Shown here: one piece after another, positions 2,595 to 14,924 of the stretch
Numbering within the stretch: position 1 is the first letter of the stretch
How the letters are laid out: every line of letters starts with the position of its first letter
Sequence record: MN047793.1
Direction: 5' to 3' (one strand)
Length of the DNA: 64,000 bases
Translations under genes and position numbers: made by a program
Notes under the pieces: generated by a model
The model's database searches: none
Seen by the model: the letters and a program-made list of their open reading frames with translations, nothing else
What the model was told of the DNA's origin: nothing

Positions 2595-2682
2595 TTGACA
2601 TGATCTAAATTATAATGTAAAATGGATGGCAGGACGGGAGAGTACACTGGCCCAAAAAGAAACCCCAGCTTGTGCTAGGGTT
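2595..2682 (+). repeat. Promoter/mini-RNA module copy 2
   Basis: TTGACA-17-TAAAAT GGATGGC AGGACGGGAG, then the hairpin. Confidence 0.85.
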
Positions 2683-7346: not shown

Positions 7347-7518
7347 ATTAGCTGTCCTGCTTGTTGCGATGTTTGGCATTACGCTTATAATCATTCTTAC
7401 GGTCACGATGGGTCGCGGCCTTGTTGAATTTGTGTGCGTGCTTGGCGACCGGGTTATTCATGACACTCTCCGTGGTTGATGTGTGTCATTATACTTATAA
7501 TTTACCAGTTGTCAAGCA

Positions 7519-9984: not shown

Positions 9985-10257
9985 TTACTTGCGGGTGATG
10001 GCGAAGTTCAGCGGGCCGACCTTGCCCGACACGTCACTGGCGGTCTTGGGCAGCTTCAGGCCAGCACCGACCTTCAGCGAGGAACGCACACGGTCTGCGT
10101 TGATGCGAGCGGTGGCCTTGGGCGAACGATACAGACCATTACGCACCGGCTTGGCGAGCGATTCAGCCAGATTGTACGCGGCGGTCTTAACCACTTCCTT
10201 GGCAGCGGCGAACGAAGTGGTGTCGGTGGACTTGTTGTTGATGGTCACGTCGTACAT
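9985..10257 (-). CDS. Basic hypothetical protein
   Basis: AAGGA RBS, own promoter, downstream terminator. Confidence 0.7.
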   Translation of the reverse strand: MYDVTINNKSTDTTSFAAAKEVVKTAAYNLAESLAKPVRNGLYRSPKATARINADRVRSSLKVGAGLKLPKTASDVSGKVGPLNFAITRK

Positions 10258-11375: not shown

Positions 11376-11618
11376 CTATCTGAGCGAGCCAATGCCATAC
11401 ATCTGAATGAAATTCGTCATCACGTCACGGTCATTCAGAATCTCATAATCCGTGAACGTATCGGCAAAACAGAACGTCAATTCCTTTTCACGATTCACAT
11501 GAATGGTGGAGGTGAATGCAACACGCTTAGACTCGGTTTCAGGTTCGTGAGTGATTTTGACCGTGTGCCAATGCATCAACTGAAACTTGCCGAGGTGGGT
11601 ATAGGTGTTGGTGCTCAT
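11376..11618 (-). CDS. Hypothetical protein
   Basis: 80-aa ORF ending in TAG. Confidence 0.65.
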   Translation of the reverse strand: MSTNTYTHLGKFQLMHWHTVKITHEPETESKRVAFTSTIHVNREKELTFCFADTFTDYEILNDRDVMTNFIQMYGIGSLR

Positions 11619-11685: not shown

Positions 11686-11773
11686 TTGACAGGACCTAAA
11701 TTATAGTGTAAAATGGATGGCAGGACGGGAGCATAGGCTAAGCCTAAAGAAAACCCCAGCTTGCGCTAGGGTC
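11686..11773 (+). repeat. Promoter/mini-RNA module copy 4
   Basis: TTGACA-17-TAAAAT GGATGGC AGGACGGGAGCATAGGCTAAGCCTA, then the hairpin. Confidence 0.85.
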
Positions 11774-13880: not shown

Positions 13881-13945
13881 TGCGATTCCTAGTTAGTGTG
13901 TATGGGTGTCATTATACAGGATAAAACGATGTTGTCAACACCTAA

Positions 13946-14092
13946 TTAGGTGAAATGCGTCACCAATCGATAGATTCCCCAAATGATAGTACCCACGAAG
14001 GCAATACCCAACACACCCACAAACAACATCCACAACACCATCAACAATTCAACGACGGTATAGCCTTTCTGATACTTACGCATGCTTTTCAT
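13946..14092 (-). CDS. Type IV pilin-like micro-protein with prepilin cleavage motif (48 aa)
   Basis: MKSMRKYQKG|YTVVELLMVLWMLFVGVLGIAFVGTIIWGIYRLVTHFT; AGGA RBS; basic leader, G-1, E+5, hydrophobic helix. Confidence 0.75.
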   Translation of the reverse strand: MKSMRKYQKGYTVVELLMVLWMLFVGVLGIAFVGTIIWGIYRLVTHFT

Positions 14093-14133
14093 GTATAGTT
14101 CCTAGTTAGTGAAAATTATTGTGTACCGGTGTG

Positions 14134-14481
14134 TTAATCAATCATGGTCGAAACTGTGCAAGGTATGCCAGCATCCTTAAGACTCATAGCCATCGCCGTT
14201 AGGCATCGTGCGGCATAATCCATGCTTTGGCTCATGCCTTCAGCATACATGAACGACGGCATACGGTATTGATAGCACTTTTCATAATCCGACCAACGAA
14301 AATCATGTGCCAATAGGGTTTTCGCTAGGGCACCATTCTTGCGAATTTTGATATTCAGCCGTGCGAACCCACACGGATACCAATGCGGTTCAGGCGTCAC
14401 GCTTTCCCTCACAAGACATCCCTTGGCATTGGTAAGATGTTCAGACAACGCTGCGGCAGTCATCGAGGCGGGGAAAGTCAT
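14134..14481 (-). CDS. Hypothetical protein
   Basis: 115-aa ORF behind promoter cassette A. Confidence 0.7.
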   Translation of the reverse strand: MTFPASMTAAALSEHLTNAKGCLVRESVTPEPHWYPCGFARLNIKIRKNGALAKTLLAHDFRWSDYEKCYQYRMPSFMYAEGMSQSMDYAARCLTAMAMSLKDAGIPCTVSTMID

Positions 14482-14541
14482 TGGATAATCTCTGTGTTGG
14501 TGTGAGTGCTATTCTACACGACTAAATTATAAAGTCAACCC

Positions 14542-14830: not shown

Positions 14831-14924
14831 TTGACAGGGCCTAAATTATAGTGTAAAATGGATGGCAGGACGGGAGCATAAGCTAAGCCCAAAAGAAAAC
14901 CCCCAGCCTTGCGACCAGGGGTTT
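14831..14924 (+). repeat. Promoter/mini-RNA module copy 5
   Basis: TTGACA-17-TAAAAT GGATGGC AGGACGGGAGCATAAGCTAAGCC. Confidence 0.85.

What the first reader, a model, noticed from the sequence alone, without database searches (positions are those of the whole stretch)
13946..14092. Headless type IV pilin mimic in the early region
This 48-aa ORF is below the ORF-track cutoff: MKSMRKYQKG|YTVVELLMVLWMLFVGVLGIAFVGTIIWGIYRLVTHFT. It has the class III signal peptide (basic leader, G-1, aromatic +1, E+5) recognised by PilD-type prepilin peptidases and the alpha-1 helix, but no globular head. It could poison or cap pilus or T2SS assembly or titrate PilD, giving superinfection exclusion against pilus-dependent phages (inference). 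It also suggests a piliated host.
Basis: partly seen in the sequence, partly recalled or inferred. Interest (0 to 1): 0.8.

Follow-up and report, generated by a model that had tools for sequence, protein, structure and literature searches.

The report
Phage-encoded headless mini-prepilin
A 48-residue early gene of the jumbo Xanthomonas phage Xoo-sp13 belongs to a previously undescribed, phage-only family of tiny membrane proteins that join a genuine pilin-type signal peptide to a conserved non-pilin tail; it most likely interferes with the host's pilus or secretion machinery, but this has not been tested.

Summary
The ORF is real, but on the minus strand (13946..14092; Xoosp13_32, mis-annotated "major head protein"). 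It has its own Shine-Dalgarno site and sits in a region with 27 perfect sigma-70 promoters.

It is not an orphan. About 25 phage proteins of 41-63 aa share 45-60% identity with it. G(-1) is kept in 24/25, [YF](+1) and T(+2) in 25/25, and E(+5) in 22/25. The mature part is 38 aa in every short-form member with an intact cleavage motif. Family profiles match pilin N-termini (Pfam N_methyl in 19/25; PDB MshA, Geobacter PilA-N, PilA). Members lie in the early block of N4-like podophages and in Xoo-sp13-like contigs. None was found in 185,579 bacterial genomes.

New finding: the protein has two modules. The TM helix plus the tail W-A-I-x-[KR]-L-V-x-H-F-T also occurs without any prepilin leader (hhalign 99.4%). 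Examples are sister phage XacN1, Streptomyces phages and a Micromonospora prophage, and in one phage the two forms sit in tandem.

Pilus, T2SS or PilD interference remains the best-supported reading but is unproven (about 0.4). The main rival is that the tail acts on a non-pilus membrane target. Sztanko et al. 2026 already noted untested truncated PilA in virulent phages, so this is a new variant of a known kind.

The parts
13946..14092 (-). Mini-prepilin gene (Xoosp13_32), 48 aa: leader MKSMRKYQKG, predicted cleavage after G10, 38-aa mature helix ending in the tail W-G-I-Y-R-L-V-T-H-F-T
   Evidence: ORF and translation; family alignments A1/A2; N_methyl hit; AF2 single helix
14063..14092 (-). 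Codons 1-10: hydrophilic, basic leader ending in Gly(-1), the predicted prepilin-peptidase cleavage site
   Evidence: Leader 6-12 aa with charge +2 to +4 in all members; G(-1) in 24/25
13949..13981 (-). Codons 38-48: conserved C-terminal tail module (W38 invariant; A/G39, V44, H46, F47, T48 highly conserved), shared with leaderless Group B proteins
   Evidence: Column conservation; hhalign A2 vs A5 99.4%; Group B sequences
14099..14111 (-). 5'UTR / Shine-Dalgarno element CACTAACTAGGAA, repeated identically in front of gene 31
   Evidence: 3 matches vs 0.05 expected
14134..14481 (-). Upstream gene 33 (115 aa, phrog_22149, unknown function), probably co-transcribed with gene 32
   Evidence: ORF; XacN1 ORF044 homologue; PHROG hit
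14511..14538 (-). Sigma-70-like promoter TTGACT-16-TAGAAT upstream of gene 33: the likely promoter of the gene 33-32 unit
   Evidence: no promoter-like site between genes 33 and 32
13911..13938 (-). Perfect-consensus promoter TTGACA-16-TATAAT of gene 31, starting 8 nt after the gene 32 stop; marks the end of the gene 32 unit

Best explanation
Gene 32 encodes an early-expressed, single-helix inner-membrane protein built from two modules. Module 1 is a type IVa-style class III signal peptide plus alpha1-N helix. It should insert the protein with the N-terminus in and the C-terminus out, have it cleaved after G10 by the host prepilin peptidase (PilD/XpsO in Xanthomonas), and place the 38-residue mature helix in the membrane pilin pool. 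From there E(+5) and the alpha1-N surface can dock it onto the type IV pilus or T2SS assembly platform, or onto the base of a growing filament. Module 2 is the conserved tail W-x-I-x-[KR]-L-V-x-H-F-T at the periplasmic membrane face, which replaces the pilin head and acts as the blocking or effector element. The predicted result is loss or alteration of surface pili (and possibly of T2SS function) soon after infection. That would give superinfection exclusion and spare progeny from adsorbing to infected cells. SHOWN: the ORF, its translation signals and its early-region setting; a phage-only family with the motif positions conserved and a constant 38-aa mature length; profile similarity to pilin N-termini; a single-helix prediction. 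INFERRED: cleavage and methylation by PilD, entry into the pilus or T2SS machinery, and the exclusion phenotype.
For: Conserved family from the exhaustive search and the profile search. G(-1) 24/25, [YF](+1) 25/25, T(+2) 25/25, E(+5) 22/25, L(+6) 24/25, while the TM core varies. The mature part is exactly 38 aa in all short-form members with an intact cleavage motif, with leaders of 6-12 aa. N_methyl hits in 19/25 members and TIGR02532 IV_pilin_GFxxxE in 12/25. The best PDB hits of the family profile are pilin residues 1-25: MshA, geopilin PilA-N, PilA. pN is well below pS between lineages. All placed members lie in phage early regions: N4-like contigs just after the gp1/gp2 homologues and before RNAP, and Xoo-sp13-like contigs. 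None was confirmed in 185,579 species genomes. A leaderless and a leader-bearing paralogue sit in tandem in L016/L017, which implies the leader adds a distinct function. Other 'headless prepilins' with different tails recur in T4-like and jumbo-like phage contigs. Precedents: P-FimU gives exclusion and truncated PilA has been noted in virulent phages (PMC12952977); the 30-aa PfsE blocks T4P through PilC (PMC8764522). G(-1) is critical for processing and E5 for assembly (PMC4471445).
Against: There is no experimental datum on this family. The window ORF alone is below the Pfam N_methyl gathering score and fails strict PS00409. The most conserved segment is the non-pilin tail. Leaderless homologues exist in sister phage XacN1, which infects the same piliated genus, and in Streptomyces phages and a Micromonospora prophage whose hosts lack type IVa pili and T2SS. 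Allele P0025, seen on 7 contigs, has lost G(-1) and E(+5) but keeps an intact tail, and two members have Q at +5. The receptors of Xoo-sp13 and of the N4-like phages are unknown, and no pilus gene lies nearby.
Confidence: 0.4

Rival explanations
1. The tail module is the effector and acts on a non-pilus inner-membrane target. The conserved TM plus W-A-I-x-K-L-V-x-H-F-T tail binds or perturbs a membrane component common to Gram-negative and actinobacterial hosts. In this subfamily the prepilin-type N-terminus only provides membrane insertion and topology, or a PilD-dependent maturation step that removes the cytoplasmic basic anchor.
For: hhalign gives 99.4% / E 2e-21 between leader-bearing and leaderless groups. 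The Group B profile recovers 88 proteins with a highly conserved tail and freely varying N-termini, including XacN1 ORF053, Streptomyces phage Circinus/BillNye gp217 and a Micromonospora prophage. The P0025 allele destroys the motif but preserves the tail. W38 is invariant, whereas E(+5) is not.
Against: It does not explain why G(-1), aromatic(+1), T(+2), E(+5) and L(+6), the exact pilin signature, are kept across about 50% divergence. It does not explain why the mature length is fixed at 38 aa, nor why both forms are kept in tandem in one phage. Ordinary N-in anchors, as in Group B, already insert the tail, so a class III signal is not needed for insertion.
Confidence: 0.3
2. Prepilin-peptidase decoy. 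The protein is made in quantity early in infection and acts as a competitive substrate or tight-binding pseudo-substrate of PilD/XpsO, so that host prepilins and pseudopilins stay unprocessed and both T4P and T2SS shut down.
For: The leader, G(-1) and alpha1-N are all that PilD needs for recognition (PMC4471445). The gene is expressed from strong consensus promoters and is too small to be a structural pilin. Q(-3) is conserved in 24/25 members as well as G(-1).
Against: A pure decoy would not need E(+5), a fixed 38-aa mature length or the conserved tail. PilD is an efficient enzyme, so titration would require very high expression. There is no direct evidence.
Confidence: 0.12
3. It is a polymerising mini-pilin. 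Like the very short Flp/Tad and Geobacter PilA-N pilins, the 38-aa mature helix is incorporated along the host pilus (a mixed filament lacking receptor epitopes) or forms a filament of its own.
For: Natural pilins can be almost headless: 44-residue prepilins in Caulobacter (PMC4471445), and geopilin domain 1 is among the best PDB matches. Sztanko et al. raise this option for truncated P-PilA.
Against: The mature helix is 26 uncharged residues after E5 plus an 8-residue tail, with no amphipathic alpha1-C or surface-exposed hydrophilic part. A filament surface built from it would be hydrophobic. No partner like PilA-C is encoded nearby.
Confidence: 0.08
4. Chance resemblance, or a mis-called or structural gene: a hydrophobic peptide that only looks like a prepilin, or the 'major head protein' of the GenBank annotation.
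For: The single-sequence Pfam score is sub-threshold. The GenBank label says major head protein.
Against: 0/200 shuffles produce the motif and it is conserved in about 25 homologues. A 48-aa transmembrane helix in an early-promoter region cannot be the capsid protein of a 309-kb myovirus, and nothing supports that label: the Pfam, PHROG and NCBIfam scans and the PDB profile search returned no capsid hit.
Confidence: 0.02

Closest known systems
Truncated phage PilA ('P-PilA', N-terminal ~60 residues) noted in six virulent Pseudomonas phages, Sztanko et al., Cell Rep 2026 (PMC12952977)
   Same: It is a phage-encoded pilin N-terminus without a head, in non-temperate phages. The two proposed, untested mechanisms are the same: incorporation without receptor epitopes, or inhibition of assembly leading to superinfection exclusion.
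   Different: That family is described as a truncated PilA. This one is shorter (38 aa mature) and ends in a conserved non-pilin tail shared with leaderless phage proteins. It occurs in N4-like and Xanthomonas jumbo phages. Direct sequence comparison was not possible because Table S3 is not held.
Prophage FimU mimics (P-FimU) of F10-like Pseudomonas phages (PMC12952977)
   Same: A phage-encoded type IV pilin-class protein that enters the host pilus system and blocks pilus-dependent phages.
   Different: P-FimU is a full-length minor pilin with a globular domain. It is functional in twitching and is expressed from prophages. It replaces a component rather than poisoning assembly.
PfsE of Pf4 filamentous phage (PMC8764522)
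   Same: A very small (30 aa) phage inner-membrane protein with the N-terminus in the cytoplasm and a conserved aromatic cluster near the periplasmic end. It blocks T4P extension by binding PilC and gives superinfection exclusion.
   Different: It has no class III signal peptide and no detectable sequence relation. It resembles the leaderless Group B proteins in architecture only.
Type IVa pilins / T2SS pseudopilins (Pfam N_methyl PF07963; TIGR02532)
   Same: Hydrophilic basic leader, G(-1), aromatic(+1), T(+2), E(+5), the L-L-x-V-L hydrophobic alpha1-N helix, and profile-level similarity.
   Different: It has no alpha1-C or beta-sheet head, is not encoded with pilus or secretion genes, and is found only in phages. 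Tyr rather than Phe predominates at +1.
Naturally short pilins: Flp/Tad pilins and Geobacter PilA-N
   Same: Mature pilins of about 40-60 residues that are almost entirely one helix.
   Different: Flp pilins carry the G/xxxxEY motif and are processed by TadV; here residue +6 is Leu. PilA-N pairs with PilA-C. Both are cellular and are encoded in pilus loci.
Pfam DUF7248 (PF23906)
   Same: Small (~58 aa) proteins with an N_methyl-type N-terminus and one TM. P0070, a true member, lies in a phage-like small-gene contig. Family members give sub-threshold hits (13-23 bits).
   Different: All members of this family score below the 27-bit gathering threshold. The tail is different: DUF7248 ends in a charged soluble segment.

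Membership tests
Type IV pilin class (class III signal peptide; Berry & Pelicic 2015, PMC4471445) | Hydrophilic leader of 6-26 residues | tested here: met
   MKSMRKYQKG, 10 aa, net +4; family leaders are 6-12 aa with charge +2 to +4
Type IV pilin class (class III signal peptide) | Leader ends in an invariant Gly(-1) | tested here: met
   G10 in the window ORF; 24/25 family members
Type IV pilin class (class III signal peptide) | About 21 predominantly hydrophobic residues after the cleavage site, interrupted by Glu5 | tested here: met
   YTVVE then 26 uncharged residues; E(+5) in 22/25 members
Type IV pilin class (class III signal peptide) | Profile match above curated thresholds (Pfam PF07963 gathering score 21.2; PROSITE PS00409) | tested here: inconclusive
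   Window ORF scores 16.3 bits, E 0.007, and fails PS00409 only at +3. Across the family, 19/25 members hit N_methyl at E<=0.01 and at least one clears the gathering score (P0022, 25.3 bits); 4/25 match strict PS00409
Type IV pilin class (class III signal peptide) | Cleavage (and N-methylation) by a dedicated prepilin peptidase | not testable with these tools
   Needs expression in pilD+ and pilD- hosts
Type IVa pilin / pseudopilin proper | alpha1-C plus a beta-sheet globular domain after the N-terminal helix | tested here: not met
   The protein ends 38 residues after the cleavage site; AF2 predicts a single helix 13-47
Type IVa pilin / pseudopilin proper | Encoded with, or dependent on, pilus or T2SS biogenesis genes; assembles into a filament | tested here: not met
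   Genomic context is not met: all contexts are phage early regions with no pil/gsp genes within +-10 kb. Assembly is not testable here
Flp/Tad (type IVb/c) pilins | G/xxxxEY processing motif; Pfam Flp_Fap | tested here: not met
   Residue +6 is Leu in 24/25; no Flp_Fap hit, only a weak TadF hit at E 0.2
Pfam DUF7248 (PF23906) | Score at or above the 27-bit gathering threshold | tested here: not met
   The window ORF has no hit; members score 13.6-23.1 bits
New phage 'W-A-I-x-K-L-V-x-H-F-T tail' small membrane protein superfamily (defined here) | Single TM helix ending in the conserved C-terminal tail; phage-borne | tested here: met
   hhalign A2 vs A5 99.4%, E 1.7e-21; 88 Group B hits; phage contexts
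Major head (capsid) protein (GenBank label of Xoosp13_32) | Capsid fold, size of several hundred residues, late structural module | tested here: not met
   48 aa, one TM helix, early-promoter region, no capsid family hit

The most novel reading that the evidence does not exclude
Phages have grafted the host prepilin signal (leader plus alpha1-N) onto an older, phage-specific membrane-effector module. The host's own prepilin peptidase and pilus or T2SS platform would then process the effector and deliver it precisely to that machinery, or the machinery would even extract and export the 38-aa peptide. If so, this is a modular, PilD-activated, machinery-targeted inhibitor class that spans N4-like and jumbo phages, and the leaderless relatives reveal a second, still unknown, universal membrane target.
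Probability: 0.15. Interest if true: 0.8.

Novelty: new variant of a known kind. Interest (0 to 1): 0.62.

Why it matters
Type IV pili and the T2SS are major phage receptors and virulence machines in Xanthomonas, Pseudomonas and relatives. A 38-residue peptide that the host processes itself and that disables these machines would be the smallest pilin-class inhibitor known. It would also be a clean tool for dissecting prepilin-peptidase recognition and platform loading. The family gives a concrete, testable case for the published speculation that virulent phages use truncated pilins for superinfection exclusion. Xoo-sp13 is the only cultured phage found to carry it, so it supplies a tractable laboratory system. 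The leader-plus and leader-minus pairs, found in sister phages, in tandem paralogues and as a natural motif-loss allele, are ready-made controls that separate the role of pilin mimicry from that of the tail. The work also corrects a wrong 'major head protein' annotation.

Tried and rejected
- A single-sequence word-indexed search found only the ORF itself. The family appeared only in the exhaustive phmmer search.
- The syntenic interval in XacN1 (between the gene 31 and gene 33 homologues) holds unrelated genes and no mini-prepilin. The Stenotrophomonas phage RAS14 locus has none either.
- tblastn of P0070 (DUF7248) and P0027 (T4-like headless prepilin) against 50,697 phage records gave no match. 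The low-complexity filter probably limits such short hydrophobic queries.
With A3 it returned 599 pattern matches, none confirmed. The tail-pattern scan gave 15 loci, of which only the Micromonospora one is a true relative.
- The JGI metagenome scan returned only ordinary full-length pilins.
- The UniRef label 'DUF2474' on the Micromonospora protein was not reproduced by Pfam, so the lead was dropped.
- The neighbouring genes gave no functional clue: only DUF and PHROG families of unknown function.
- Table S3 of Sztanko et al. is not held, so the relation to their truncated P-PilA family could not be checked.
- A Foldseek search of the model was not run, because a single helix gives meaningless matches.
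- The host of the N4-like contigs could not be assigned. The terminase is at most 77% identical to that of P. putida phage Zuri, and contig GC is 51-58%.
- The holin/lysis reading was considered and rejected: the gene lies in an early region, not a lysis cassette.
- A compensated frameshift as the origin of P0025 was rejected: the DNA alignment shows substitutions only.

Full report
**Origin and observation**

The window is the left 64 kb of Xanthomonas oryzae jumbo phage Xoo-sp13 (MN047793.1). Window coordinates equal record coordinates.

The reported ORF exists with exactly the quoted translation, but on the minus strand, at 13946..14092. GenBank calls it Xoosp13_32, 'major head protein'. 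That label cannot be right for a 48-residue hydrophobic peptide.

The gene has an AGGA Shine-Dalgarno site 7 nt upstream of the ATG. This lies within a 13-nt element, CACTAACTAGGAA, that is repeated identically in front of gene 31. The gene has no promoter of its own. It lies 41 nt downstream of gene 33, which has a TTGACT-16-TAGAAT promoter. A perfect TTGACA-16-TATAAT promoter for gene 31 starts 8 nt after its stop codon.

The window contains 27 perfect TTGACA-N15-17-TAWAAT sites against 0.12 expected by chance. The 'early, host-RNA-polymerase-transcribed region' reading is therefore well founded, although it remains an inference from sequence.

**Is the motif more than chance?**

Taken alone, the ORF is borderline.
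- Pfam N_methyl gives 16.3 bits (E 0.007), below the 21.2-bit gathering score.
- Strict PROSITE PS00409 fails because of Val at +3.
- A relaxed class III pattern occurs once in the six-frame translation of the window and never in 200 dinucleotide shuffles.

Comparative data settle the question. A word-indexed search found only the ORF itself. The exhaustive phmmer search over 1.84 billion representatives found seven proteins of 44-63 aa that are 45-55% identical over their full length. A profile search extended this to about 25 members at E<1e-8.

In the alignment, the most conserved columns in the N-terminal half are exactly the pilin signature positions:
- Q(-3) and G(-1): 24/25 each
- aromatic(+1) and T(+2): 25/25 each
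- E(+5): 22/25
- L(+6): 24/25

The transmembrane core varies freely. The leader varies from 6 to 12 residues (charge +2 to +4). The mature part is exactly 38 residues in every short-form member with an intact cleavage motif. This implies a fixed register between the cleavage site, E(+5) and the C-terminus.

Further family-level support:
- 19/25 members hit N_methyl (best E 2e-6) and 12/25 hit TIGR02532 IV_pilin_GFxxxE.
- The best matches of the family profile among solved structures are residues 1-25 of MshA, Geobacter 'geopilin domain 1' (PilA-N) and PilA.
- Non-synonymous divergence is well below synonymous divergence between lineages.
- AlphaFold2 with the family alignment predicts a disordered leader and one continuous helix at residues 13-47, mean pLDDT 88.

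**Where the family lives**

Every member that could be placed is on phage DNA.
- Five distinct lineages are on N4-like podophage contigs, in the early block just after the gp1 and gp2 homologues and before the RNAP gene.
- P0015, 60% identical to the window ORF, is on a small-gene contig distantly related to Xoo-sp13 and XacN1, at a non-syntenic position.

Among 50,697 isolated-phage records, Xoo-sp13 is the only carrier, and the hit is reciprocal. Two independent scans of 185,579 species-representative bacterial and archaeal genomes found no leader-bearing member. One scan used patterns from the leader and the TM helix; the other used the C-terminal tail.

The hosts of the N4-like phages could not be assigned.

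**The unexpected part: two modules**

The most conserved segment of the family is not pilin-like. It is the C-terminal tail W-A-I-x-[KR]-L-V-x-H-F-T, in which W38 is invariant. The same TM-plus-tail module occurs with unrelated, non-prepilin N-termini ('Group B'):
- XacN1 ORF053, in the sister jumbo phage infecting X. citri
- an IMG/VR 78-kb contig
- several metagenomic phage contigs
- Streptomyces phages Circinus and BillNye gp217, a 32-aa protein
- a Micromonospora prophage

Profile-profile comparison of the two groups gives 99.4% probability, E 1.7e-21. A Group B profile recovers 88 proteins, almost all without a source name and none with a precomputed Pfam domain.

The reverse combination also exists. 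'Headless prepilins' with the same style of leader but different tails ('Group C') occur in a jumbo-like contig (P0033, whose first 19 residues almost match the window ORF), in a 168-kb T4-like contig (P0027) and as Pfam DUF7248 (P0070). N_methyl-motif ORFs in T4-like Aeromonas phages were listed as long ago as 2006 (PMC1524935).

Two natural 'experiments' stand out.
- In L016/L017, a leaderless 56-aa paralogue is immediately followed by a leader-bearing 63-aa paralogue.
- Allele P0025 is seen on 7 contigs of an otherwise near-identical N4-like phage. Seven of its 11 amino-acid changes fall in residues 5-12, including G(-1) to S and E(+5) to G, while the tail is untouched (hypergeometric P=5e-5).

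**Mechanism**

Established knowledge comes from Berry & Pelicic 2015 (PMC4471445):
- The class III signal is sufficient for N-in/C-out insertion.
- G(-1) is absolutely required for cleavage by the prepilin peptidase.
- E5 is dispensable for cleavage but needed for homopolymer assembly.

The conserved signature therefore argues that these proteins are recognised by the same host factors as pilins. I put the probability that they are prepilin-peptidase substrates at about 0.65.

The best-supported overall explanation (0.4) is that the processed 38-aa helix enters the pilin pool and docks at the T4P or T2SS platform or the filament base, where its tail blocks function. That would give early superinfection exclusion.

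Precedents exist for each element:
- P-FimU pilin mimics confer exclusion (PMC12952977).
- The 30-aa PfsE blocks pilus extension by binding PilC (PMC8764522).

The main rival (0.3) is that the tail acts on a non-pilus membrane target and the leader is only an insertion or maturation device. The leaderless homologues in XacN1 and in actinobacterial phages favour this view, as does the P0025 allele. The strict conservation of the pilin signature, the fixed mature length and the retention of both forms in tandem argue against it.

Weaker alternatives are a PilD decoy (0.12) and a polymerising mini-pilin (0.08). Chance or a capsid role is effectively excluded.

**Comparison, novelty and verdict**

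The protein meets the sequence definition of a class III signal peptide. It fails the structural and genomic criteria of a true type IVa pilin or pseudopilin: it has no head domain and is not in a pilus locus. It also fails the Flp motif and the DUF7248 threshold. It should be described as a phage 'mini-prepilin', not filed as a pilin.

Phage pilin mimicry and small membrane inhibitors of T4P are already known, and truncated phage PilA has been noticed. The finding is therefore a new variant of a known kind. The new elements are a distinct, unannotated, phage-only family; the two-module architecture with exchangeable leader; and its presence in the early regions of N4-like and jumbo phages.

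Function is untested. Xoo-sp13 offers a cultured system, and the natural leader-plus and leader-minus pairs provide built-in controls. Interest: 0.62.

Noticed in passing
window 13946-14092 (-): GenBank annotates this 48-aa transmembrane peptide as 'major head protein' (Xoosp13_32). This is almost certainly an annotation error.
   Followed up: yes
window 14134-14481 (-): Gene 33 is annotated in GenBank as only 14134-14262 (42 aa). The ORF extends to 14481 (115 aa), matches XacN1 ORF044 over residues 23-112 and phrog_22149 over residues 11-115, and has a promoter and RBS at the longer start, so the deposited start is probably wrong.
   Followed up: partly
window 1-64000: There are 27 perfect TTGACA-N15-17-TAWAAT promoters (0.12 expected). 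They are on the minus strand up to ~15 kb and on the plus strand from ~22.5 kb, suggesting two divergent early transcription blocks. Many are followed by reused ~25-nt UTR modules (for example GTCCTGTATACTGACCACACACCA before genes 36, 37 and 40, and TGTAGAATAGCACTCACACC before genes 26, 33 and 41).
   Followed up: partly
window 2595-2623, 11686-11714, 14831-14859 (+): Three near-identical plus-strand promoter-like sites (TTGACAnGnnCTAAATTATAnTGTAAAAT) face against the minus-strand gene array. Each lies beside a minus-strand promoter, so they may be antisense or divergent promoters, or part of one repeated intergenic cassette.
   Followed up: no
window 13939-13952: A perfect 14-bp palindrome, CACCTAATTAGGTG, overlaps the stop codon of gene 32 and abuts the -35 box of the gene 31 promoter. 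It could be an operator-like site.
   Followed up: no
window 14897-14924 (-): A strong intrinsic terminator (12-bp stem, 6 G-C pairs, T-run) lies upstream of the gene 34 promoter and delimits transcription units in the early array.
   Followed up: no
window 11376-11618 (-): An 80-aa ORF with its own CTATAAT -10 box and GGGA RBS is not annotated in the GenBank record.
   Followed up: no
L010/L011/L012 gene at 10001-10138 (P0025) vs L004/L007 (P0011): This natural allele of the mini-prepilin has substitutions (no frameshift) clustered over the prepilin motif (G-1 to S, E+5 to G, and others), while the tail is unchanged. It is present on 7 contigs. dN/dS against the neighbouring allele is ~1.
   Followed up: yes
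L016:2441-2611 and 2623-2814; L017:40-210 and 222-413: Tandem paralogues in one phage: a leaderless 56-aa form followed 12 nt later by a 63-aa leader-bearing form that has Q instead of E at +5 and a 17-aa C-terminal extension. XacN1 ORF053 carries a related extension.
   Followed up: partly
L015:5003-5155: A 50-aa DUF7230 gene directly upstream of the mini-prepilin in the JGI contig matches Xoosp13_17 (window 7348-7461) and an XacN1 ORF at ~80% DNA identity. Small early genes appear to be shuffled between these jumbo phages.
   Followed up: no
L004, L008, L013, L018 (N4-like contigs): The early regions of these uncultured N4-like phages also carry DUF4326, NADAR, RadC and CxxCxxCC-motif genes next to the mini-prepilin. 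The terminase is at most 77% identical to that of any isolated phage, so these are new Schitoviridae-type lineages.
   Followed up: no
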